Positions 12,645 through 25,166 are shown, counted from the stretch's first letter. The stretch: 64,000 bases of DNA from Diplonema japonicum (GCA_964019335.1 OZ025681.1:310001-374000); one strand, 5' to 3'. The notes: generated from the sequence alone by a model not told the origin. Made by a program: numbers and translations.

Positions 12645-13195
12645 TCACCTGCATGTGCTTCTCTTGTTACATGTTTTGTTGCTTTGTACGTGAAATCGGA
12701 TCTTTGTATCAGGAAACCTTTGCAAAACAGTCCGCGTATGCCTGATCAAGGAGGCCTTTGTCTCCTTATCATCAGCTTGCTTCGAACAATCAGCGCTTAT
12801 CGTCAACAGGCCATCTAAAAACACAGGCAGCGTGGTCTTGTAGGGTTGTTCTGGATTGCCCACATTCCATTTGAAACCTGCCGTCTTGTTGCTGGCACCG
12901 ATTCCTTCTGCAATGACAGCGGGGTCCAACGACAGGCAGACGTTGGCAGGAGACTTCTCACTCGCACTGACTACGAAAGCTGCCCCCCGATGCACTCTAT
13001 CAGGAAATTCCCGGTGCTGGCTGCCATGTCGGACGACGTGCGGGTGGCTCAGTTGCGCAATTTCTTTTACCACGCACGACCTCTCCGTGTCTCTGTCCAC
13101 CGCCTGCGACACCATTCCCGCAATCGTTCTGTTCCCAAAAACACGGGTAATAGGAACGTCAGCCGAAGAGTCGCCGAACTTCGTTGCCCCGGAGC

Positions 13196-13199
<4 letters not shown>
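12645..13199 (-). pseudogene. Probable degenerate Ser/Thr protein kinase gene
   Basis: MGSG start; VSQAVDRDTERSCVVKEIAQLSHPHVVRH resembles subdomains I-IV with a deletion. FLIECIGG (subdomain V-like) is in a shifted frame and SPANVCL resembles KPxNxL. No intact HRD or DFG. Confidence 0.45.
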
Positions 13200-13228
<29 letters not shown>

Positions 13229-13265
13229 CCCTGTGCGGATTTTTTTTTTTTTTTTTTCCCCCCCG

Positions 13266-13317
<52 letters not shown>

Positions 13318-13326
13318 AGGTTTTTT

Positions 13327-14634
13327 TTATTCGGCTGCGTGGACGCGTGGTTTTCCGTCTATTCCACTGGCGAGTTCTATGTCGTGGTCGGACGGTTTCC
13401 CGTACAGAGACTCCTCTACATCTGATGGTTTGACATAGGTATGATCAGCGTTGGTGTAGTCCTGGTCGTCTGTGGGAAGTAAGTCTTGAGAAAGCCCTGC
13501 CATCCTCATCTCACCATCGTACTCAATGCTTCGGAGGTCGGAGTTCGACACGGGGAGGGACCAAGGGTCCAACCTGGCCTGGATCGTTTGGTCCCGCGCC
13601 TTCGTCGAGAGGAAGTCCTCCTGCGCACCGTAGAACCCTCTTCTCCGTGCCTCTTCGAGGATCGGCCTCATGGCGTCTCCTTCCTCTTCGACCTCACGTT
13701 CAAACGCTTCGTCACGGCTATGCTGCACCGCCTGAGCAAGGCTCATCAACATGTCGTATTGAAGAAGTTGTGTTGGAGAGGATTCTGACAAAGGGATCAA
13801 CATTGAGGATGCTGTGTGCATAGAAAACAACGGTGCGCCAACAGAAAACGATACCAGGGTTTTCCCCACTTCGTCCAATACAGAGCAAATGTGGTAGAGA
13901 AGTTCTGCGGAATCAATGGCGTTCGAGGCGTTGCGAGCGATGAGCCGGACCCTTTTGTTTTCGTAAAGCAGCGAACAGATCTCTTCGCACTTGACAATGA
14001 GATCTTTTGTTTGGATGTTCGCTCTGATGGAATATTCCTCGATGTGCTGTTCTCTGTCGGAGTTCAACTGTTTTTGAGAGGATTCCAGGGCGATCCGCGA
14101 ACGAGCGGTTCTTACCAGAAACGGTTGTAAGTGTCGCAGCCTACAATAGGCGTGATCTGCCTGTTCGTTTAATGCTGTTAAACATAACGACATTTTCAGC
14201 TCGTTTTCGTATTGTAATGCTGATTTTCGGGTCATTTCAACGTCGGTAACCTTTTCGTCGTAGCCGTCCAGCGTGCCGATATGGGTGATTGTGATTTTAC
14301 CGACGCTTGCAGGTATCTCGTCCCCGATTAGCATTTCTTCTTTGATGGTGTCAATGGTGTCGGACATCTGTGTTCGAACCTCGTTTGCTATCTCCGCTGC
14401 TCTGATCTTTCCCTCCAGCTGTCTGCTGAGTCTTTCTTCCATCACCTTTACCTGTGCGCGTCCCACGGGTTCCTCTTCCTTGCTGAGTATCCTGATGTCT
14501 TTATTATGCTTCATGTGACGCATCATTGGGTCTGAAAAATCCATTTCATCATTTGGGTCTGTTCCATGGACAGATGGAAAATCCCTATGGTCACTGCGTA
14601 CTGTAGAAACATATCGTATTAGTGTTCGTCTCAT
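13327..14634 (-). CDS. Hypothetical protein, 435 aa, possibly mitochondrial
   Basis: Long ORF with an A-rich leader. MRRTLIRYVSTVRS resembles a short euglenozoan mitochondrial presequence. No domain recognised. Confidence 0.75.
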   Translation of the reverse strand: MRRTLIRYVSTVRSDHRDFPSVHGTDPNDEMDFSDPMMRHMKHNKDIRILSKEEEPVGRAQVKVMEERLSRQLEGKIRAAEIANEVRTQMSDTIDTIKEEMLIGDEIPASVGKITITHIGTLDGYDEKVTDVEMTRKSALQYENELKMSLCLTALNEQADHAYCRLRHLQPFLVRTARSRIALESSQKQLNSDREQHIEEYSIRANIQTKDLIVKCEEICSLLYENKRVRLIARNASNAIDSAELLYHICSVLDEVGKTLVSFSVGAPLFSMHTASSMLIPLSESSPTQLLQYDMLMSLAQAVQHSRDEAFEREVEEEGDAMRPILEEARRRGFYGAQEDFLSTKARDQTIQARLDPWSLPVSNSDLRSIEYDGEMRMAGLSQDLLPTDDQDYTNADHTYVKPSDVEESLYGKPSDHDIELASGIDGKPRVHAAE

Positions 14635-16307: not shown

Positions 16308-19300
16308 TCAGAAATCATCATAATAACCAGTTGCTTGCTGATGCTGGGTGGGTAGAGCCACGCCCTGTGCTGCTTGCATCTGCATCCAGCTCTGTTCGCC
16401 TTGCTGTGGATGGTACCCCTGGGGCTGCTGGCGATATTGTTGCTGTGGCTCGCTACGCCCTTGCCCCTGTTCTTGCATAAGAGGCGAAGCAACATTTGTG
16501 AAGTTCTGCGGTGTGCTTCCACTCGCGGGAGGAGCCTCGCCACCTGTGTAGGAACGCTGCGCAGGTTGAACAGACGGCTCGTTGTGCGGGACATTCGTGT
16601 AACCTTGGCTTGCATCAGATCGTGTATTGACGTATTGCTGCGACGACCCATGAGCGGGGGGCGGTACTGGTGGGACGTTAGTGCTCTGGTACCCATGAGC
16701 AATCGTGCTCTGAGCTTGTGGTGGTGCACTCGACTGTTGATTCTCACTGACGTTCTGCTGATGGGTATTGACGATCGTTTGATGGCCATTTGCGTGTTGA
16801 TAGGGATTGACGTTCTGCTGATGCCCATTGACATTGTTGTGCTGATGTCCATTGACACTTTGCTGATGCCCATTGACACTGTGCTGATGCCCATTGACAT
16901 TGTTGTGCTGATGGGTATTGTCGATCGTTTGATGGCCATTTGCGTGTTGATAGTGATTGACGTTCTGCTGATGCCCATTGACATTGTTGTGTTGATGTCC
17001 ATTGACACTTTGCTGATGCCCATTGACACTGTGCTGATGCCCATTGACATTGTTGTGCTGATGGGTATTGTCGATCGTTTGATGGCCATTTGCGTGTTGA
17101 TAGCGATTGACGTTCTGCTGATGCCCATTGACACTGTGCTGATGGGTATTGACACTGTGCTGATGCCCATAAACGTTCTGCTGATGGGTATTGACGCTCT
17201 GCTGATTCCCATTGACACTGTGTTGATGCCCATAGACGTTCTGCTGATAGGGACTGACGTTATTGACGTTTTGCTGGTGTCCTTCGACATGCTGCTGCGA
17301 CTGTCCCTCCACCCTGCGCTGTGGTATGTCTTGTGTCTGTGACACACCAGCCCTCTCTTGCGTCATCTCACCCTGCCGACTCACATAGTTCTGCTGTGGC
17401 GTGTATGACGATACTTCTTGCCGTACATTCGGGTGGTAATTTGTGTAGCAAGCCTCTACGGGCGGGCGGCTGCCTGGGTTTGCAGGTACCACACCTTGCA
17501 TGCTTGTTGGCGTTGCGGTCCCTAGTTCACTGATTCCCTTCATTTCTGCCCGCACGGTCCCGTTCTGCAGGGCACCTTGCTCGCCTACGAGTGGAGTGTC
17601 CGATGATGTGTTCCTCTGTGGCTGGGGACATGGCGTGGCACTCTGCATATGGACGTCAGTTTGTCGTATTTGCGTCGTGGGGTGCTGCACAGGGCTTTCT
17701 GAGTATCTTTGGTTTACGTGCATCACATTCGGTTGGCTTTGCGGTGTACTCACCTGGGGTTGTCCGGCATGCGTTTCACTGGGATGCGCCTGTTGTTGGT
17801 AGCCACTCTGCGGCACACTTGCTCTCTCTTGCCACATCCCGTACTGCGGTGCATTCGCGAAGCTCTGAACAGGACGCATCATTTGTGGCCCGCTGGCATA
17901 GCCCTGTGGCGGCACATTGCCATTGCTATTCTGTTGACCATTCATGCTGTAGCTGCTCGGTTCTTGAGACTGCGGCAAACTTGATGTGCCTTGCAACGGC
18001 CCGCTCAGTCTGTTTACGTGACTTTGCCCTATGCCTCCCTCGTGTCCCTGTGCGGTTGTCAACCCGCTATACTGCCCGTTTGCTATTCCTTGATGTTGCG
18101 GTGCATAGCCGCAATTTTGCTGCACAGGAGGAAGAGCGTGTGCCGTCGACGGGGTAGAATATGGTGATTGCGGGTGTCCGTTAGCTATTCCCTGACTCTG
18201 CGGTGCATGACCTTGACTTTGCGGGACCCGTGTCTCATTGGAAACATGGCTGTGCTGCAACTGCAGGTAACGTGGTGGTTCCACGTGCTGCGGCTGGGAT
18301 GGGGGACCTTGGCTGTGCGGCTTTTGCACAACAACATTATCATAGCCCAAAGCCGGGGTATATTGCACAGGGGTCTGGCAGGTTGCATCTGGTACATCTG
18401 GCGCTGATGTTACTTGTTGGACCGGCGGTAAAGGTTCTCTGCGCGCTTCTTGCATTTCCTTCATGGGGGCAAGGGCAAGGGTGTTAACGCTGACGAATCG
18501 TGAGACCGCCATGCCCTTGGCGTCGCTGTAGTTCCGAATCTCAGATCGCATTGTCTGTTGGGTGACCTCGGGGACTTTGTCGCGCAGCTCGATGGGGGTC
18601 TCTTCCACGACGAAAGAGAAATTGAAGCGTTCGCTGAGGACGACAATGGCGCTGTTTTGCAGGGCGAGGTTCTTTGTGGCCCAACCCTGCCCATGTGGGG
18701 TCTTCCGAGGTGGGTAGGGAGTACGGCGCCCCTGGGCATCATTGGTGCCAAAGTCCTTCCTGTTGACAAGCGTTATATTACACAACCAACCCTCAATAGT
18801 CTCCTCGGTAACGGCATCGATCTCGTACGTCTTGCTAGTCAGCTCACTGAGCTTGTCAATAGGTGTTCGTTGGAACTGCCAAGTCTCCTGGGTGTAGACC
18901 ACTGTGGCTTCGGAGTCTGTGAAACTGACGACTGCGGTGTTCTGCGTTTCGAACATCTTCATCGGAATTTTCTGGTTGTTCTTGTGGTAGTGCTTTACGC
19001 GGTCGATGAGGTTCTCTTTAACCAAGTACCCGCACACCTTGTACATCAATTTGCTAACGGCCTGCTTTACAGCTGTGCCGTGGGCCTCAAACTTCATCGA
19101 TGCTGTCCCCACGTGGCATGTGATGAGAGCTGTCCATCCCGCTTCGCCGCCGTCTACGTAATAAATGCAAGGGAAAGGTGTGGCGTATTCGCGCTTGTTC
19201 TGCTCGGCGAACCCTGAGACAAGACGTTCCGCGTACAAAGGGTCTTCGTACCACAACGCTCTGGTGTCTTGAAGCTCTTGTCCTGGGAGCTCGCGGATTT

Positions 19301-20906
19301 TATTCATGATATTTGAGAAATCGAGGTTTCCTTTGGCTTTTCTCTCATCGGCGTCAGACTCGACCATCAGGACGAATCGGGCGTTTGCACGACGGGCCCT
19401 ACCCCTGCATTGGTTCAGCGCCACGATGTTATAGTTGCTCATGAAAAATCTAATGACAAGGGAGCAGGTTGGGATGTCGATGCCTTCCTCGTACACTGTA
19501 GTGCAAATGATAACCTTCGTGGCTCCTTCTTCAAATTCAGCGATCCGTGCGGGTTTGTCAGCGTGCCCATAGTCAACGCATACATCCGCCAGGGTAGGGT
19601 GGCTCCCGAATGTCCCTTTGAGCTTCTCTTGAAGTCTAGAACATGCAACTTTCGTTTCAACGAAGACAAGGACACGCATTGTGTCTCCAGACCGGGCCTT
19701 CTCCTCGGCTATGATGTCTGTGATAGCTTGCTCCTTTGATCCGATTGGTTCATTCAGACTGCCGAACATTTTACACACGGAAAAGAGGACCTGGTTGAGG
19801 TACTCAGCGGTTTGCTTCGGACGGACCTTCTTCTCGAACTCAGTTTTTTGTTTTTCCCAGTGGAGCCCGGCTGCCTTGACTCCAATGTTTTCAGTCAACT
19901 GCAGCACCACAATGACGTTCATCACGAGGAGTGCCAGGGCTTCGATGTCGTGACAGTTGTTCAAGTGCGCCGTGTTTTGGATTTCCTGCAACAGCGGCCT
20001 TTCGTTGGCGATGTTGGGGTTTTCCAAATAGGCCCGGACCTTTTTGCAAGTATCCATGCTCGGGTCTATGTTATGCTCCTCGATACACATGGTCATGATC
20101 TGCTTGCTGTTCGACTGTATTTTCAAGAGCTCGGTCTTCACGTACTGCTCGCAGTCAGAGGGCGAGACGTTGTAGAAAATCGGTGCGCCCCTCGCCTCGT
20201 GTTCCTCCATTTCCTTGATGTTTTCCTCGATAGTTACCGTGCAAAGCTTTGCACCGAGGATGGAGCAAAGCTTGTTAATGTTGTCTTCTAAGTTCGCGAT
20301 TTGAAACACAGGTGTTGCGGTCAGCCCGAGGATAAATGGGCGGGAGTCTTCCAGCTGCTGGTAGTGGTTCTTCATGACTGACGCTCCTGGCGACTTCTTG
20401 TTGACGTTGTGTGCTTCATCAAAAATTACCAGGCAAAAGTCCGACAGCTTTGCTGTGTTGTCACGAAGCATTTCTGAGAAAGCCCCTGTTACACCAAATA
20501 CATATTCGAAGTTTCTTATGCTGCGCAAGTCGGTGGTTTTATCCTGTAAGCTGACGATGCCCCCTGCTTGCATGTAGTGAGAGGTCATGAGTGCCACACA
20601 ACTTCTGTACTGTTGGCACGCCAAAGCCCTCGTTTGGGTCAGAAAAAGGACGGGTTTCGGTTTGTTCCTCTTCATTGCGCTACCTCTTACGTGCTCTGCG
20701 ATGCAAAATGATACCTGTGTCTTGCCGGTCCCGGTCGGCATAACTAGCAACGTGCCTTGGTTGTTGCAGCTTTTTTTGAAGGCCTCCTTCTGATACTCCC
20801 TGAGGCTTGCGTAGATTTTGTCGCGAAAATAGTGTGGGTTTTGCATGGACCACTCCATGACCTGCATCTCGTTCTGCTTGCGCTGCTGAAAATTCTGCAT
20901 CATCAT
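16308..20906 (-). CDS. Dicer/RIG-I-family SF2 DExD/H RNA helicase with DUF283-like and dsRBD-like domains and a Q/H/N-rich repeat tail
   Basis: Motifs LREYQ (Q), PTGTGKT (I), DEAH (II), LTATP (III), VLVFV (IV), EEGIDIPTCSLVIRF (V) and QCRGRAR (VI), plus a Hel2i-sized helical insert. KQAVSKLMYKVCGYLVKENLID is a DUF283-like end; TPIDKLSEL...GQGWATKNLALQNSA is dsRBD-like. Confidence 0.9.
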   Translation of the reverse strand: MMMQNFQQRKQNEMQVMEWSMQNPHYFRDKIYASLREYQKEAFKKSCNNQGTLLVMPTGTGKTQVSFCIAEHVRGSAMKRNKPKPVLFLTQTRALACQQYRSCVALMTSHYMQAGGIVSLQDKTTDLRSIRNFEYVFGVTGAFSEMLRDNTAKLSDFCLVIFDEAHNVNKKSPGASVMKNHYQQLEDSRPFILGLTATPVFQIANLEDNINKLCSILGAKLCTVTIEENIKEMEEHEARGAPIFYNVSPSDCEQYVKTELLKIQSNSKQIMTMCIEEHNIDPSMDTCKKVRAYLENPNIANERPLLQEIQNTAHLNNCHDIEALALLVMNVIVVLQLTENIGVKAAGLHWEKQKTEFEKKVRPKQTAEYLNQVLFSVCKMFGSLNEPIGSKEQAITDIIAEEKARSGDTMRVLVFVETKVACSRLQEKLKGTFGSHPTLADVCVDYGHADKPARIAEFEEGATKVIICTTVYEEGIDIPTCSLVIRFFMSNYNIVALNQCRGRARRANARFVLMVESDADERKAKGNLDFSNIMNKIRELPGQELQDTRALWYEDPLYAERLVSGFAEQNKREYATPFPCIYYVDGGEAGWTALITCHVGTASMKFEAHGTAVKQAVSKLMYKVCGYLVKENLIDRVKHYHKNNQKIPMKMFETQNTAVVSFTDSEATVVYTQETWQFQRTPIDKLSELTSKTYEIDAVTEETIEGWLCNITLVNRKDFGTNDAQGRRTPYPPRKTPHGQGWATKNLALQNSAIVVLSERFNFSFVVEETPIELRDKVPEVTQQTMRSEIRNYSDAKGMAVSRFVSVNTLALAPMKEMQEARREPLPPVQQVTSAPDVPDATCQTPVQYTPALGYDNVVVQKPHSQGPPSQPQHVEPPRYLQLQHSHVSNETRVPQSQGHAPQSQGIANGHPQSPYSTPSTAHALPPVQQNCGYAPQHQGIANGQYSGLTTAQGHEGGIGQSHVNRLSGPLQGTSSLPQSQEPSSYSMNGQQNSNGNVPPQGYASGPQMMRPVQSFANAPQYGMWQERASVPQSGYQQQAHPSETHAGQPQVSTPQSQPNVMHVNQRYSESPVQHPTTQIRQTDVHMQSATPCPQPQRNTSSDTPLVGEQGALQNGTVRAEMKGISELGTATPTSMQGVVPANPGSRPPVEACYTNYHPNVRQEVSSYTPQQNYVSRQGEMTQERAGVSQTQDIPQRRVEGQSQQHVEGHQQNVNNVSPYQQNVYGHQHSVNGNQQSVNTHQQNVYGHQHSVNTHQHSVNGHQQNVNRYQHANGHQTIDNTHQHNNVNGHQHSVNGHQQSVNGHQHNNVNGHQQNVNHYQHANGHQTIDNTHQHNNVNGHQHSVNGHQQSVNGHQHNNVNGHQQNVNPYQHANGHQTIVNTHQQNVSENQQSSAPPQAQSTIAHGYQSTNVPPVPPPAHGSSQQYVNTRSDASQGYTNVPHNEPSVQPAQRSYTGGEAPPASGSTPQNFTNVASPLMQEQGQGRSEPQQQYRQQPQGYHPQQGEQSWMQMQAAQGVALPTQHQQATGYYDDF
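16745..17290 (-). repeat. Coding hierarchical tandem repeat (21/24-bp units inside a 150-bp higher-order unit)
   Basis: gatcgtttgatggcc recurs at 16773, 16923 and 17073. Units encode HQ(Q/H)(S/N)VN(G/T). Confidence 0.9.
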
Positions 20907-21368
20907 TTTTTCTTTTTTTTCGTTCTGGTTGTTCCCCCTCCCTCCCCCTCCCCCCCACCGCCCTCCTTTTCGTGTCGTGTGGGAGAAATATTATATGAGT
21001 TAAAGGAGGCCGGTGTTGGCGGCGCCCTTAATATTATAAAAAATGTGAGATGGATTTTAGTAGCATGTAACACAGTTTCCACCACGCATAGGGTGTCTAG
21101 GTTTTCCCCAAATGAAAAGTGCACAGTTTTCTCACTTTTTTTTACTATTTGAGGCGGCCTGCCCCCCCCCCCCCCCCCCCCCATGAACAACTGAATAAAA
21201 AAGAAAAAACACACTCTTTTGTTAAAAAAAACACTTTTTGTTTCACTATTTTCTTTTTTTTTTGAATTTTCATTCTTTTTTTTTCCTCTAGGGGGGGTTT
21301 CTTTTTTGGTTAATGGTGCTTGTGCAGGGTGCCCCCACCGGCTTCCTTTAAATCATCGAGTTTTTTTT

Positions 21369-22271
21369 TCATTCCTTCACAGCGTTTTTTTTAAGGTGGC
21401 GGTGATAGAGATCAGCGCAAACGTGGCACATTTCACCGCACACTCGGCAATGGTTATAAAACAGTTCGGGCTTGTTTGGATAGTTTCTGCAGCACGCGGG
21501 GCAAGTTCGTCCGGATCCGGACAGGGGCAAGGGGCAGAGAACCCCGGGAGTGATAATATAAGAGAAGAAAAGGTTGTAGTCGGGACGGAGCTTCTCAACT
21601 GAGGTTAGAAGTGACGAGTACTCCATAGAAGCTGCAGACAAGAGATTCTTGAAGGAGTGGGAGGCAGGGCAAACAAGGTTAGTGTAGAGGGGGAAAAGAG
21701 ACAAAACGTCGACTGCAGCGTAAAGAAGAACCTCGTGAGCGATGGGGCGGACGGTCCAGTCGACTTCTGTGATGGAAACTGCGGATTTTAAATCAGTCAG
21801 GCGGTGGAGAGTTTCGTCGGTTTCGGATAATAATTGCAAGGTCTTCCGCAGCCCGACTACACGTGGATACCCTTCCACGCCCTTTCGTTTGATATAAGGC
21901 TTAGCCATGTGTTTCTTCTGCAATGTATCTGCAAGCTGCAGATCGACGATGTTGTTCACGTCCATTCCTAGAAAGTGTTTCAAGACGTCGCAGTCCCTTC
22001 TGCAATCCCACATCAGCACCTCTACATTAGCGTCTTCGAACAATTCTTGTAGTACTTGAGATCCCTCGGTGCCTACAGTTCGTATATCCACGATCAGTAC
22101 CTCTTCTTTCCCCTCGATCCCGATCTGTACCAGTTCTAACGTGCCTTCGCGGGACATTCTTATGCCTTCGCAGTCCAAAGCGATTCTGTTTGCGCCCTTG
22201 ACATCGGCGATGGCGCCGCGGAGGTCTTCAGCACTATCGATCAGTTTGTAACTCACATCCGTCGTGGCCAT
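21369..22271 (-). CDS. DEDDy 3'-5' exonuclease, EXD1/Egalitarian-like, with C-terminal Cys cluster
   Basis: ExoI IALDCEG, LVQIG, ExoII WDCRRD, DLQLA, ExoIII WTVRP...YAAVDV; tail CPACC...CRVCGEMCHVC. Confidence 0.9.
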   Translation of the reverse strand: MATTDVSYKLIDSAEDLRGAIADVKGANRIALDCEGIRMSREGTLELVQIGIEGKEEVLIVDIRTVGTEGSQVLQELFEDANVEVLMWDCRRDCDVLKHFLGMDVNNIVDLQLADTLQKKHMAKPYIKRKGVEGYPRVVGLRKTLQLLSETDETLHRLTDLKSAVSITEVDWTVRPIAHEVLLYAAVDVLSLFPLYTNLVCPASHSFKNLLSAASMEYSSLLTSVEKLRPDYNLFFSYIITPGVLCPLPLSGSGRTCPACCRNYPNKPELFYNHCRVCGEMCHVCADLYHRHLKKNAVKE

Positions 22272-22805: not shown

Positions 22806-25166
22806 TCATGGCTTGTAGGTGTAAGAAAGCCTTCCTTGGGTAAGAAGGTTCGAGCAGTCGACTGTGGCAGTGGTTGGGATGTGGAGGCCCTTGGCACCGT
22901 TGTTGAAGGTGCAGAAGTTCTCAGCGGCCCCCTGCTCTTGGTGCTGCGCCGAGGGCGGACAGGGGTAGCTCGCAGGAGGCGACACAGACCCGTCCCAGAT
23001 GTAGCTGAAAGAGTTCTCCTTGGGCCAGTAGCTGCAGTCAGCGTTCAGGGACTGCGGGGGAGGGATGATCACCCCGTTGGTGTTGTTCCTCCACTCACAG
23101 GTGCGGGTTCCGTCGGTGTTGTTGGTGACAACGGTTTCAGGAGGGCAGGTTGGCTGCGGCATCGGAGCACCGCCCTGCACGAAGGCCAGCGTGGGGGCCG
23201 AGGTGATCCCGCACTGGTTACTGCCCCTCTCGAGCCTGAGGTACCCTTCCTCGCCCCAGTCAGTCCCCCAAGAGTTCTTGATAAGCCAGTACTTGGTGCC
23301 CTGGTCCACACCGTACCCCACCAGCAGCACTGCGTGGTCGGGTTCATGGTTGCAGCACCCTGTCATGATGCCCCCTGTGTACGGCCACCACAGCTGCGTC
23401 ATCGCATCCACCGTGATGGACACAGGGCCGTACTTCACGAGGGCGGCCGCCATGGCTGCCTCGCTGTTGTTCACACCGTAGTATCCGGTCACCTTGACGT
23501 CTGCCATGGTGTGCCCCGAGGTGCACTGGGGGACATTCCCCTCCCCTGACACGTATGGGTAGCTCTCCTCCGTGGCGTCCCCGTTTTGCTTCACATACTC
23601 GATCGCAAGGTACGGCCACCCGCCGTCGCACCCGTCGCAGTTCTTTTCGCAGCTCACAAGCTCCTGCTCCGAGAGGCTCTGCAGGGGGTTGCCCGCCATC
23701 GCCCACGCCCCCTCGATCACACCGGTGGTGCTGAACGACCAGCACGACCCACATTGGGCCTGGTTCTTCACAGGGGTGACGACACCCTTCGTCCTCCAGT
23801 CGATGGACTCGGGGAGGTTTCTGACGTCCTCGTCGGTGATGGTGAGCTCCTTCGGGAGGGGCGCCACAGCACCCTCGGGCGTCTTCCTTGCACAGTCCCT
23901 GTAGTGTAGCTCATACTCTGCCTTCGACCAATCCGCCAGGCTGTTCGGCATTTTGTTGTCCACTTCCGCCGTTCTGAGGAAGGCACTCAAGTGCTTCCTG
24001 AAGTTCTGGAACCTCCGCGCCTCCTCCACGGAGTTCGCATACTGCTTGTTGTTGTGGGCCTTCCACTTCTGGAACATCTCCTGGTGCCTGTTCAGGGTGT
24101 GGGTGCGGTCAACAGGCTCCTCCAAAGGCGCAGGCCTCTTCTTCCAGTCCGGAAGCTGCTTCGATGTCCCGAAGATCGTCCTGTTGGCGGCGAGGGCTGT
24201 GCTGATGGAGAAGGAGGCGGCGCCGAACTGCATCTCGCAGGTGAACTCCGTGTTGGGAGGGAGCACGAAGTAGCAGCCGCCCCTGTTCCCGAAGTCGTTC
24301 CTGTTTGAGCCCCACGCGCAGACGTTTGCCCCGCCGATCCCGCAGTGGAAGGAGTTATAGTCGCCGTTAGTGCTGGATGAGGTGACCATCACGACGAGAT
24401 CCCGGTCGTTGTGGTTGTTTGTGTAGGCACAGTCGCACATGTTGGGCTTGGGGTAGGACACCAGGGGGCAGTCCCACTTGGTCTCGACGGCGGCGTTAGA
24501 CGAGAGGTAAGGCTGCTTGAATGATAGGGCGGCAGAGGTTCGCATGTTGATGCTGCCCTGGGCACGGCAGGTCATAGACGCCTTTGCGGGGAGGATGTAC
24601 CCGCAGGAGTAGCCACCCGTCCCGTTCACAGCGTAGCTGCAAAGCGTCATAGTCGCTCCGGAGTTCGTGTACGTGCAGTCGTATGTGTTGTGCGAGCCCC
24701 CAGAGGCCTCGAAGGACTGTGCCACCCACATGTCCGCGGACTCGGTGTTGGTGAAGGTACATGAGCCGCCCGAGCAAGGAACCGGCTTCTGATCGGTCGA
24801 AAGGACCGAACCGGTCAGAGGGGCCGTGTGGGCACCGATAAAGTGGAAGGTCCCCTGCGACTGGCACTGAAACTCGCTCCCAGCAGGGAGGATGAAGTAG
24901 CAGTCCCCGGCGCTGTAGCTGTCGGCCGCCACCCATTTCCTGCTGCAGTACGTCATCTGCTCGTCGCTGCAGGTGAAGGAGCCCTCCGTCTCCCCAGAGG
25001 CGAGCTCAACCTGGAAGAACAAGCTCACAGCCTCGTCGGCACTCCCGGTGTTCCTGTAGTTGCAGTTCCCGTTGCTCCCAGAAGGGCAGTTGATGGACGC
25101 CCACTCCATCGCCTGTGCTGAGACTGCTAGCAGCAAGGCCAGCATCGGTGCCCGTGTGGCAACCAT
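22806..25166 (-). CDS. Secreted/lysosomal cathepsin L-like cysteine protease (C1A + I29) with long Cys-rich N- and C-terminal extensions
   Basis: Signal peptide; I29 prodomain (FQKWKAHNNKQY...EEARRFQNF); DWRTKG, QAQCGSCWSF (catalytic Cys), DHAVLLVGYG (His) and IKNSWG (Asn). Confidence 0.93.
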   Translation of the reverse strand: MVATRAPMLALLLAVSAQAMEWASINCPSGSNGNCNYRNTGSADEAVSLFFQVELASGETEGSFTCSDEQMTYCSRKWVAADSYSAGDCYFILPAGSEFQCQSQGTFHFIGAHTAPLTGSVLSTDQKPVPCSGGSCTFTNTESADMWVAQSFEASGGSHNTYDCTYTNSGATMTLCSYAVNGTGGYSCGYILPAKASMTCRAQGSINMRTSAALSFKQPYLSSNAAVETKWDCPLVSYPKPNMCDCAYTNNHNDRDLVVMVTSSSTNGDYNSFHCGIGGANVCAWGSNRNDFGNRGGCYFVLPPNTEFTCEMQFGAASFSISTALAANRTIFGTSKQLPDWKKRPAPLEEPVDRTHTLNRHQEMFQKWKAHNNKQYANSVEEARRFQNFRKHLSAFLRTAEVDNKMPNSLADWSKAEYELHYRDCARKTPEGAVAPLPKELTITDEDVRNLPESIDWRTKGVVTPVKNQAQCGSCWSFSTTGVIEGAWAMAGNPLQSLSEQELVSCEKNCDGCDGGWPYLAIEYVKQNGDATEESYPYVSGEGNVPQCTSGHTMADVKVTGYYGVNNSEAAMAAALVKYGPVSITVDAMTQLWWPYTGGIMTGCCNHEPDHAVLLVGYGVDQGTKYWLIKNSWGTDWGEEGYLRLERGSNQCGITSAPTLAFVQGGAPMPQPTCPPETVVTNNTDGTRTCEWRNNTNGVIIPPPQSLNADCSYWPKENSFSYIWDGSVSPPASYPCPPSAQHQEQGAAENFCTFNNGAKGLHIPTTATVDCSNLLTQGRLSYTYKP

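What the first reader, a model, noticed from the sequence alone, without database searches (positions are those of the whole stretch)
16308..22271. Stand-alone Dicer/RIG-I-like helicase next to an EXD1-type exonuclease: candidate dsRNA-sensing or silencing module
Seen: a full SF2 helicase whose motif V/VI wording (EEGIDIPTCSLVIRF, QCRGRAR) is of the Dicer/RIG-I type. It is followed by a DUF283-like segment (~18990-19250) and a second dsRBD-like segment (~18630-18870), with no PAZ, RNase III, CARD or RLR Zn-CTD that I can recognise. The gene immediately upstream (462-bp gap, same strand) is an intact DEDDy exonuclease. Established: trypanosomatid Dicers (DCL1/2) lack a helicase domain and rely on DnaQ-family cofactors RIF4/RIF5; EXD1 and Mut-7 act in animal small-RNA pathways. 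Inference: this could be the detached helicase half of a split Dicer, or an RLR-like viral RNA sensor working with the exonuclease. Adjacency in polycistronic units does not by itself imply shared function.
Basis: partly seen in the sequence, partly recalled or inferred. Interest (0 to 1): 0.82.

Follow-up and report, generated by a model that had tools for sequence, protein, structure and literature searches.

The report
Stand-alone Dicer-type helicase in a diplonemid
A marine protist (Diplonema japonicum) expresses a gene for the helicase half of a Dicer enzyme, with two dsRNA-binding-type folds but no cutting domains; it belongs to an undescribed diplonemid family, and nothing links it to the exonuclease gene next door.

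Summary
Window 16308-20906 (-) is an intronless, transcribed 1532-aa ORF. Residues about 30-550 form an intact SF2 helicase of the RIG-I/MDA5/Dicer clade, with Hel1, a helical Hel2i insert, Hel2 and a pincer. Two dsRBD-fold modules follow. The first sits where Dicer's DUF283 sits and superposes on it. A species-variable Q/P/S/N/H-rich tail of about 730 aa ends the protein. I found no RNase III, PAZ, CARD or RLR C-terminal domain.

Full-length relatives are few. The named ones are all Diplonema species. The D. papillatum ortholog is annotated 'hypothetical' and is absent from that genome's published RNAi list. Phylogeny cannot place the family within the Dicer/RLR group, and a position at its base, next to archaeal Hef, is not rejected.

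The upstream 300-aa gene is a DEDDy exonuclease with an intact active site. Its closest solved relative is trypanosome TbRND, not EXD1: it has no Lsm domain and its catalytic residues are all present. The two genes lie in a same-strand run of unrelated genes.

Earlier notes of this scan report related helicases elsewhere in this genome. Verdict: a new variant of a known kind (a Dicer-related helicase). The 'module' claim is unsupported.

The parts
16308..20906 (-). Complete CDS (1532 aa) of the stand-alone Dicer/RLR-clade helicase
   Evidence: ORF. Identical to D. japonicum transcript P0026 apart from repeat copy number.
20169..20819 (-). Hel1 (RecA1), aa 30-246, with motifs I, II (DEAH) and III
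   Evidence: Pfam ResIII/DEAD; motif positions; AF2 model.
19680..20156 (-). Hel2i-type all-helical insertion, aa 251-409
   Evidence: Seven helices between Hel1 and Hel2 in the AF2 model, pLDDT mostly above 85. Aligns contiguously with MDA5 residues 308-822.
19356..19679 (-). Hel2 (RecA2), aa 410-517, with motifs V and VI
   Evidence: Pfam Helicase_C; motifs at aa 473 and 499.
19257..19355 (-). Pincer-like helices and linker, aa 518-550
   Evidence: Helices 518-528 and 530-539 in the AF2 model.
19002..19256 (-). dsRBD-fold module 1, in the position of Dicer DUF283, aa 551-635
   Evidence: AF2 models. VIA: DHX9 dsRBD2 Z 9.1; ancestral Dicer DUF283 Z 8.1 (92 aligned); mouse Dicer residues 618-713 Z 8.0. 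No Pfam hit.
18606..18917 (-). dsRBD-fold module 2, aa 664-767; lacks the canonical KKxAK basic motif
   Evidence: VIA: Dus2 dsRBD Z 10.0 (rmsd 2.2, 79 aligned); DCL4 dsRBD2 Z 8.6; Staufen dsRBD5 and TRBP/Loqs dsRBD3 Z 7.5-8.3. Family alignment.
16311..18509 (-). Low-complexity tail, aa 800-1532 (Q 17%, P 9%, S 9%, N 9%, H 7.5%); not conserved between species
   Evidence: Composition. No Pfam domain. Absent from the D. ambulator protein and replaced by other low-complexity regions in relatives.
16748..17248 (-). Tandem repeats (21-nt and 150-nt periods) encoding the H/Q/N/V repeats; copy number differs between genome and transcriptome assembly
   Evidence: TRF; BLASTP gaps against P0026.
20907..21368 (-). 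462-bp intergenic spacer with homopolymer runs
   Evidence: Sequence printed.
21369..22271 (-). Complete CDS (300 aa) of a DEDDy 3'-5' exonuclease, TbRND-like
   Evidence: ORF. The exact sequence is present in a transcriptome-derived collection. PDB phmmer: 7c45/7c42 TbRND E 2e-14 over aa 7-292.
21675..22247 (-). Exo domain, aa 9-199, with intact D33, E35, D89, Y184 and D188
   Evidence: Pfam PF01612; residue positions; alignment to TbRND.
21396..21539 (-). Cys/His-rich C-terminal region, aa 245-292, aligned to the first zinc knuckles of TbRND but with non-canonical spacing
   Evidence: HMMER alignment; sequence.

Best explanation
The 1532-aa gene encodes an expressed, diplonemid-specific, stand-alone member of the RIG-I-like/Dicer helicase group, the duplex-RNA-activated ATPases. 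It has the 'base' of a Dicer: Hel1, Hel2i, Hel2, a pincer and a DUF283-like dsRBD. A second, probably non-canonical, dsRBD fold and a long disordered Q/P/H/N-rich tail follow. It has no nuclease.

Shown: the domain architecture, the intact ATPase motifs, expression, and conservation of aa 20-775 in other diplonemids.

Inferred: it clamps and translocates on double-stranded RNA using ATP, as the Dcr-2 and DCL1 helicase-DUF283 rings do. It works as an accessory factor in the organism's small-RNA or dsRNA-surveillance machinery, with dsRBD 2 and the tail recruiting partners.

The upstream 300-aa gene is a catalytically intact RNase D-type (DEDDy) exoribonuclease. It is closest to trypanosome TbRND, an Exo domain plus zinc-knuckle enzyme that trims U-tails. 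It is most likely an independent neighbour in a polycistron-like gene run, not a dedicated partner of the helicase.
For: Helicase class:
- PDB phmmer ranks MDA5, an ancestral Dicer helicase, RIG-I, DCL1 and DRH-1 at the top, above Hef.
- The AF2 model of aa 1-800 has pLDDT 84.7. Its Foldseek top 50 are all DRH-1, MDA5, RIG-I, LGP2 or Dicer, at 1e-23 to 1e-21.
- Among 1.84 billion representatives, the nearest non-family hits are Dicers carrying RNase III motifs and RLR-like proteins.
- Archaeal Hef separates with 100% SH-aLRT in two trees.

dsRBD modules.

Family:
- Six representatives match over the helicase plus dsRBD region. They are D. japonicum, D. ambulator, D. papillatum DIPPA_29454 ('hypothetical') and three unnamed ENA assemblies.
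- The gene is expressed and intronless.

RNAi context:
- The genome has three Piwi-domain genes.
- The D. papillatum paper lists DCLs, Agos, Piwis and an RdRP with an N-terminal helicase, but not this protein.
- No locus in this genome combines a Dicer-type helicase with a Pfam-detectable RNase III domain.

Exonuclease.

Neighbours are unrelated genes on the same strand.
Against: - No functional data exist for any family member.
- The helicase's position inside the Dicer/RLR group is unresolved. Grouping with other euglenozoan stand-alone helicases has only 71-89% support. Alliances with Dicers (p-AU 0.33), with RLRs (0.36), or a basal position next to Hef (0.44) are not rejected. Eukaryotic FANCM/Mph1 was not in the tree.
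- Neither dsRBD module reaches a Pfam threshold, and both lack the canonical KKxAK motif, so RNA binding by them is uncertain.
- Three paralogs of the exonuclease in this genome are fused to MOV10-like RNA helicases. This shows that the exonuclease subfamily does work with helicases, and it slightly favours a link that I rate as unlikely.
- That the diplonemid DCL1 lacks a helicase rests on earlier unchecked notes and on analogy with T. brucei. I could not locate DCL1 myself.
Confidence: 0.6

Rival explanations
1. The helicase and the adjacent DEDDy exonuclease work together: the helicase engages dsRNA and the exonuclease trims or degrades the strands or small-RNA 3' ends. The pair forms a silencing or dsRNA-sensing unit.
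For: The two genes are adjacent on the same strand with a 462-bp gap. DEDDy exonucleases recur in small-RNA pathways; EXD1 is one example (PMC4712191). In this genome three paralogs of this exonuclease are covalently fused to MOV10-type SF1 RNA helicases, so coupling of exonuclease and helicase is a local theme.
Against: Diplonemid genes lie in long same-strand runs of unrelated genes. Here the neighbours are a papain-family protease, a small membrane protein and a large coiled-coil protein. The flanks of the paralogous loci are equally unrelated. The other Dicer-type helicase loci (C17, C47) have no exonuclease neighbour. The word search found the exonuclease only in D. japonicum and Rhynchopus, but the helicase in D. 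japonicum, D. ambulator and D. papillatum. The fused helicases belong to a different superfamily.
Confidence: 0.13
2. Naturally split Dicer. The protein is the detached helicase-DUF283 base of Dicer and acts in trans with a trypanosome-type, helicase-less DCL to load or thread long dsRNA.
For: It has a Dicer-like order of domains, with the helicase followed at once by a DUF283-like dsRBD. No helicase-RNase III fusion was detected in the genome. There are precedents for relocated Dicer helicases: Dictyostelium Dicers lack the helicase and the RdRPs carry it (PMC2175303), and the D. papillatum RdRP has an N-terminal helicase. Earlier notes say DCL1 here is Tpt1-like + RNase III + primase-polymerase.
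Against: The tree does not place the family inside the Dicer clade. The genome has two more Dicer-type helicases, DjC17 and DjC47, that could equally fill this role. There is no interaction evidence. I did not verify the DCL1 architecture here.
Confidence: 0.2
3. RLR-like innate sensor. The protein detects viral dsRNA and signals or restricts independently of RNAi, like RIG-I, MDA5 or nematode DRH-1.
For: The top sequence and structure matches include MDA5, RIG-I and DRH-1. An RLR alliance is not rejected.
Against: It has no RIG-I_C-RD zinc domain and no CARD or other signalling domain. It lies outside the well-supported metazoan RLR clade. No downstream pathway is known in Euglenozoa.
Confidence: 0.1
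4. FANCM/Hef/Mph1-type DNA translocase acting on branched DNA, not on RNA.
For: These helicases belong to the same wider clade. A basal position next to archaeal Hef is not rejected (p-AU 0.44).
Against: Hef scores about 40 bits lower than MDA5, and FANCM is not among the best 60 PDB hits. No FANCM or Hef appears in the Foldseek top 50. There is no ERCC4, HhH or FANCM-specific Pfam domain. The helicase is followed by two dsRBD folds, which is an RNA-protein hallmark.
Confidence: 0.04

Closest known systems
Dicer N-terminal 'base' module (helicase + DUF283), e.g. Drosophila Dcr-2, Arabidopsis DCL1/DCL4, reconstructed ancestral Dicer helicase (PDB 9mw6/9mx3)
   Same: Same order of parts: Hel1, Hel2i, Hel2, pincer, then a dsRBD-fold domain directly after the helicase. 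Intact ATPase motifs. Sequence E about 1e-24 and structural matches.
   Different: No platform, PAZ, connector or RNase IIIa/b. The second dsRBD comes straight after the first. Long disordered tail. Not placed within the Dicer clade in the trees.
Dicer-related helicases and RIG-I-like receptors (C. elegans DRH-1/DRH-3; RIG-I, MDA5, LGP2)
   Same: Stand-alone helicases of the same clade without nuclease domains. DRH-1 and MDA5 are the top Foldseek matches.
   Different: RLRs and DRHs carry a zinc-binding C-terminal RNA-end-recognition domain (PF11648), and often CARDs or other N-terminal domains. Here the C-terminal RNA-binding role is taken by dsRBD folds.
Dictyostelium HelF (dsRBD + helicase; knock-out makes cells hypersensitive to RNAi) and the Dicer-type helicase domains on Dictyostelium and D. 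papillatum RdRPs
   Same: The host's Dicers lack the helicase, which is encoded elsewhere. HelF combines a helicase with a dsRBD (PMC4894637; PMC2175303).
   Different: HelF has its dsRBD at the N-terminus. I did not test its relationship to this family, because no HelF sequence was available from the tools.
Other euglenozoan or protist stand-alone helicase + DUF283/dsRBD proteins (this genome's C17 gene; Euglena gracilis EG_transcript_789; Namystynia P0032; unnamed P0040, P0051)
   Same: Helicase of the same clade followed by a weak Dicer_dimer or dsrm hit, and no RNase III. They group with the family at 71-89% support.
   Different: One C-terminal dsRBD-like domain, not two. Closer to RIG-I and Dicer in sequence (E 3e-46). 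The grouping with the window's family is not significant.
Trypanosoma brucei TbRND (PDB 7C42-7C4C), for the neighbouring exonuclease
   Same: DEDDy Exo domain followed by a Cys/His-rich C-terminal region. Full-length alignment, E 2e-14. The Exo + zinc-finger combination is described as unusual (PMC7797062).
   Different: TbRND has four canonical CCHC knuckles and a predicted mitochondrial signal. Here there are about 50 residues with non-canonical Cys/His spacing and no evident presequence. Orthology was not established.

Membership tests
RIG-I-like/Dicer helicase clade (duplex-RNA-activated ATPases) | Intact SF2 motifs I, II (DExH), III, V, VI | tested here: met
   GTGKT at aa 59-63, DEAH at 163-166, TAT at 196, EEGIDIP at 473, QxRGRxRR at 499. 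These motifs are invariant or nearly invariant across 58 aligned homologs.
RIG-I-like/Dicer helicase clade (duplex-RNA-activated ATPases) | All-helical Hel2i insertion between the RecA domains, and pincer helices after Hel2 | tested here: met
   The AF2 model shows helices at aa 251-409 between Hel1 and Hel2, and helices 518-539 after Hel2. Contiguous alignment to MDA5. Pfam RIG-I_C (Hel2i) is not detected by sequence.
RIG-I-like/Dicer helicase clade (duplex-RNA-activated ATPases) | Closer to RLR/Dicer than to FANCM/Hef | tested here: met
   Met by similarity only: PDB phmmer gives MDA5 90 bits against Hef 52 bits, and the Foldseek top 50 are all RLR, DRH or Dicer. By phylogeny it is unsettled: Hef splits off at 100% SH-aLRT, but a basal position next to Hef is not rejected (p-AU 0.44), and eukaryotic FANCM was not sampled.
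Dicer (bona fide) | Tandem RNase IIIa/IIIb domains | tested here: not met
   No Pfam RNase III hit at E<=1 in the core or the tail. No RNase III signature motif by regex (the D. japonicum transcript P0026). The transcript ends at the same stop codon.
Dicer (bona fide) | Platform-PAZ end-binding module | tested here: not met
   No Pfam PAZ hit. Residues 800-1532 are low complexity.
Dicer (bona fide) | DUF283 (dsRBD fold) directly after the helicase | tested here: met
   Met by structure only: Z 8.0-8.1 to the DUF283 of the ancestral and mouse Dicers, over 89-92 residues at the equivalent position. Pfam Dicer_dimer is not detected in this protein, but is weakly detected in the relatives P0032 and P0051.
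RIG-I-like receptors / DRH-1 | Zinc-binding C-terminal regulatory domain (PF11648) | tested here: not met
   Absent here. Present in the control RLR-clade proteins P0064 and P0085, scanned with the same method.
RIG-I-like receptors / DRH-1 | N-terminal signalling domains (CARD) | tested here: not met
   The helicase starts at about aa 30, and there is no CARD hit.
FANCM/Hef/Mph1 | ERCC4-type nuclease or pseudo-nuclease, HhH2 or FANCM-specific domains | tested here: not met
   None detected by Pfam. The archaeal Hef hits carry PF02732 and PF21210.
EXD1 | N-terminal Lsm domain that binds the Tdrd12 helicase | tested here: not met
   The Exo domain begins at aa 9 of 300. The definition comes from PMC4712191.
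EXD1 | Catalytically inactive DEDD site | tested here: not met
   D33, E35, D89, Y184 and D188 are all present and align with the TbRND catalytic motifs.
TbRND-type RNase D (Exo + zinc-finger domain) | DEDDy Exo domain with intact site | tested here: met
   Pfam PF01612 E 4e-19; alignment to 7c45.
TbRND-type RNase D (Exo + zinc-finger domain) | C-terminal CCHC zinc-finger domain | tested here: inconclusive
   A Cys/His-rich region at aa 245-292 aligns with the first TbRND knuckles. The canonical C-x2-C-x4-H-x4-C spacing is not kept, and it was not folded.
TbRND-type RNase D (Exo + zinc-finger domain) | Mitochondrial location and U-tail-specific trimming | not testable with these tools
   No localisation predictor or assay was available. 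The N-terminus has no obvious extension before the Exo domain.
TbRIF4 | DEDDh (DnaQ-H) C-terminal exonuclease | tested here: not met
   The window's enzyme is DEDDy (Y184) with an N-terminal Exo domain. TbRIF4 is DEDDh and C-terminal (PMC3359990).

The most novel reading that the evidence does not exclude
Diplonemids carry a naturally 'exploded' Dicer. The nuclease core (a trypanosome-type, helicase-less DCL) and the helicase-DUF283 base are separate genes. They act in trans to select and thread dsRNA. The window's protein would then be a bona fide missing RNAi core factor, and its disordered tail would target it to silencing bodies.
Probability: 0.2. Interest if true: 0.75.

Novelty: new variant of a known kind. 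Interest (0 to 1): 0.5.

Why it matters
Euglenozoan RNAi is known for Dicers without helicases. How those enzymes recognise and process long dsRNA is unclear. TbRIF5, the one known DCL1 cofactor, has no recognisable domain and no diplonemid counterpart.

An expressed, conserved helicase + DUF283 + dsRBD protein that the published diplonemid RNAi inventory missed is a concrete candidate for that role. It can be tested directly in the tractable relative Paradiplonema papillatum, where the ortholog is DIPPA_29454. It also adds a deep-branching eukaryotic lineage to the Dicer/RLR helicase family, whose early history is still debated.

The claim should stay modest. Stand-alone Dicer-related helicases are already known in animals, the function here is inferred, and the link to the exonuclease that made the finding look like a 'module' is not supported.

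Tried and rejected
The single metagenome scan returned only distant matches to the N-terminal RecA lobe, at 26-38% identity (one short 36-residue segment at 50%).

2. Finding the organism's DCL1, to check that it lacks a helicase.
- Pfam RNase III models hit only two small ORFs.
- PTS_2-RNA and Prim-Pol searches did not find a large DCL-like ORF.
- I therefore rely on indirect evidence and on unchecked earlier notes.

3. Identifying the C-terminal 1126 aa of the C47 helicase protein. No Pfam, PDB or homolog match was found. A Pfam RdRP search of the genome was blank, but its controls were blank too.

4. Resolving the helicase's place in the tree.
- A 91-row mixture-model run did not finish.
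- The LG+G4 tree and the 45-row PMSF tree leave the backbone unresolved.
- AU tests reject none of the four placements tried.

5. Experimental localisation. DIPPA_29454 was not found in the held supplements of the P. papillatum subcellular proteome or genome papers.

6. Rfam found nothing in the window.

7. Readings rejected on the evidence:
- EXD1 membership.
- RIF4 homology of the exonuclease.
- A FANCM-type DNA helicase.
- A mitochondrial role for the helicase. This is less certain: the D. papillatum ortholog has a 520-aa Q/P-rich N-terminal extension, which argues against a presequence.


Full report
**Organism and gene models**

Earlier notes of this scan name the genome Diplonema japonicum. 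A 62.3-Mb assembly of that species is published (PMC13598402). My own check agrees. A protein from the EukProt D. japonicum transcriptome (P0026, EP01064) is identical to the window's helicase ORF over all non-repeat sequence, and differs only in the number of 50-aa repeats. The exact 300-aa exonuclease sequence is also in that collection. Both ORFs are therefore complete, intronless and transcribed. They lie in a run of minus-strand genes with unrelated products: a papain-family protease at 22806-25166, a 1731-aa coiled-coil protein, a small membrane protein, and an ORF without Pfam hits.

**The observation**

- The helicase ORF is 16308-20906 (-). The motifs are GTGKT, DEAH, TATP, EEGIDIPTCSLVIRF and QCRGRARR.
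- Pfam finds only ResIII/DEAD/Helicase_C, at aa 34-508.
- Against all PDB sequences, the best hits are MDA5 (7.5e-25), a reconstructed ancestral Dicer helicase, RIG-I, Arabidopsis DCL1 and C. elegans DRH-1. Archaeal Hef is at 4e-13, and FANCM is not in the best 60.
- An AlphaFold model of aa 1-800, built on a 58-sequence alignment, has mean pLDDT 84.7. It shows Hel1, a seven-helix insertion at aa 251-409 (Hel2i), Hel2 and two pincer-like helices.
- Its 50 best Foldseek matches are all DRH-1, MDA5, RIG-I, LGP2 or Dicer/DCL chains, at 1e-23 to 1e-21.

**The post-helicase region**

Residues 530-800 were folded separately with the family alignment (pLDDT 79). They contain two alpha-beta-beta-beta-alpha modules.
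- Module 1 (aa 551-635) superposes on DHX9/MLE dsRBD2 (Z 9.1 and 8.6). It also superposes on the DUF283 domains of the ancestral Dicer helicase (Z 8.1, 92 residues) and mouse Dicer (Z 8.0), and it occupies the same position relative to the helicase.
- Module 2 (aa 664-767) superposes on the Dus2 dsRBD (Z 10.0, rmsd 2.2 A) and DCL4 dsRBD2 (Z 8.6). It also matches several protein-binding dsRBDs: Staufen dsRBD5 and TRBP/Loqs dsRBD3.

Neither module reaches a Pfam threshold. In the family alignment, the start of helix 2 reads G-[WYF]-x-T-x3-A-x-Q-N-S-A-L, not the basic KKxAK motif. Whether module 2 binds RNA or a protein partner is therefore open; that is my inference. Residues 800-1532 are Q/P/S/N/H-rich with tandem repeats. 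They have no domain and are not conserved.

**Relatives**

A profile search of 1.84 billion representatives found 5018 helicases at E<=1e-3. Only six matched across the helicase and both dsRBD modules (E 0 to 1e-102). The next hit drops to 7e-52. The six are D. japonicum, D. ambulator, D. papillatum KAJ9455105.1 ('hypothetical protein DIPPA_29454', with a 520-aa Q/P-rich N-terminal extension) and three unnamed ENA assemblies. All have low-complexity extensions, at varying ends.

The D. papillatum genome paper lists DCL1, DCL2, five Piwis, three Agos, an RdRP with an N-terminal helicase and a RIF4 homolog. DIPPA_29454 does not appear in it or in its held supplements. Literature searches found no description of such a euglenozoan protein.

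**Phylogeny**

The helicase cores of 91 proteins (LG+G4) and of 45 proteins (LG+C20 PMSF) give the same picture.
- Archaeal Hef is split off at 100% SH-aLRT.
- The diplonemid family is monophyletic at 100%.
- Canonical Dicers (98-99%) and animal RLRs (95-99%, including proteins with CARD and RIG-I_C-RD) form their own clades.
- The family groups at only 71-89% with a set of other stand-alone 'helicase + DUF283/dsRBD' proteins. These are a second D. japonicum gene on contig 17 (best PDB hit RIG-I, 3e-46), Euglena gracilis EG_transcript_789, a Namystynia protein, and two unnamed ones.

AU tests do not reject an alliance with Dicers (p 0.33), with RLRs (p 0.36), or a basal position next to Hef (p 0.44). 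Membership of the Dicer/RLR group therefore rests on similarity, fold and domain context. Placement inside the group is unresolved, and eukaryotic FANCM was not sampled.

**Genomic context for RNAi**

The genome has three Piwi-domain genes. A protein search of the whole genome found three Dicer-type helicase loci: this one, contig 17 (about 813 aa), and contig 47 (1745 aa, with a C-terminal 1126 aa that matches nothing). None contains a detectable RNase III domain. The only Pfam RNase III-like hits are two small ORFs elsewhere.

Earlier notes of this scan say the following.
- DCL1 of this genome is a 2002-aa Tpt1-like + RNase III + primase-polymerase protein of the trypanosome type.
- Another helicase is fused to a dead RdRP.
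- A further stand-alone helicase with dsRBD-like domains exists on another piece of the genome.

I could not locate DCL1 myself, so these remain leads. Published text confirms that T. brucei, Tetrahymena, Giardia and Dictyostelium Dicers lack the helicase, and that in Dictyostelium it sits on the RdRPs (PMC2175303). Dictyostelium also has HelF, a dsRBD + helicase protein whose loss makes cells hypersensitive to RNAi.

**The exonuclease**

The 300-aa protein has a PF01612 Exo domain at aa 9-199 with D33, E35, D89, Y184 and D188 intact.
- Its best solved relative is T. brucei TbRND (7c45/7c42, E 2e-14, aligned over aa 7-292). The alignment includes a Cys/His-rich C-terminus opposite TbRND's first zinc knuckles. 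Egalitarian follows at 2e-9, and EXD1 structures do not appear.
- TbRND is a mitochondrial, U-preferring RNase D with an unusual Exo + CCHC zinc-finger architecture (PMC7797062).
- EXD1 is defined by an Lsm domain and a dead active site (PMC4712191). Neither applies here.
- TbRIF4 is DEDDh and C-terminal, and RIF5 has no known domain (PMC3359990).
- The only other close homolog found is a 322-aa Rhynchopus humris protein carrying an automatic KEGG EXD1 label.

**Is the pair a module?**

Evidence for:
- The two genes are adjacent.
- The three genomic paralogs of this exonuclease are N-terminal Exo domains fused to Upf1-like SF1 RNA helicases, and two of the three also show a MOV10-type beta-barrel. 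This exonuclease subfamily therefore does work with helicases in this organism.

Evidence against:
- Adjacency carries little weight in polycistron-like arrays. The flanks of the paralogous loci and of the contig-17 helicase are equally unrelated genes.
- The other Dicer-type helicases have no exonuclease neighbour.
- The fused helicases belong to a different superfamily.
- Co-occurrence across species is not evident.

**Verdict**

The helicase is a real, expressed, diplonemid-specific, stand-alone Dicer-related helicase with a DUF283-like dsRBD and a second dsRBD. It is a new variant of a known kind, missing from the published RNAi inventory of its relative. It is a good candidate accessory factor for helicase-less euglenozoan Dicers. 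Its function, and any tie to the TbRND-like exonuclease next door, remain inference.

Noticed in passing
G000:C72:485521-488652 (+) = L043:4521-7652; G000:C59:2867-6160 (-) = L044:1867-5160; G000:C33:459926-463405 (+) = L045:4926-8405: Three large genes (1043, 1097 and 1159 aa) fuse an N-terminal DEDDy 3'-5' exonuclease to an Upf1-like SF1 helicase (AAA_11/AAA_12). The exonuclease part is 29-30% identical to the window's 300-aa protein. Two of the three also have a MOV-10 beta-barrel. The combination resembles RNA-silencing helicases with a built-in exonuclease.
   Followed up: partly
G000:C17:265284-267776 (+) = L011:7285-9777: A second stand-alone Dicer/RLR-type helicase of about 813 aa. Its best PDB hit is the RIG-I helicase at 3e-46. 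It has a very large Hel2i insert and a weak C-terminal dsrm-like hit. It groups with Euglena and Namystynia proteins.
   Followed up: partly
G000:C47:511911-517148 (+) = L014:3912-9149: A 1745-aa protein with a Dicer-type helicase at aa 160-600 and a C-terminal 1126 aa that matches no Pfam family, PDB chain or database protein.
   Followed up: partly
window 22806-25166 (-): A 786-aa papain-family cysteine protease (Peptidase_C1 with I29 propeptide). It has a roughly 340-aa Cys-rich N-terminal extension made of repeated segments, and a Cys-rich C-terminal extension.
   Followed up: no
window 12846-13433 and the 20907-21368 spacer: Long homopolymer runs lie in the intergenic regions: poly-T and poly-A around 13200-13300, and a G21 run plus several A/T runs in the helicase-exonuclease spacer.
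   Followed up: no
G000:C22:508879-509757 (-) = L012:5879-6757; G000:C54:501602-502255 (-) = L013:5603-6256: These two small ORFs (292 and 217 aa) are the only Pfam-detectable RNase III-like domains in the genome. They are probably organellar or ribosomal RNase III-like proteins and not Dicers.
   Followed up: no
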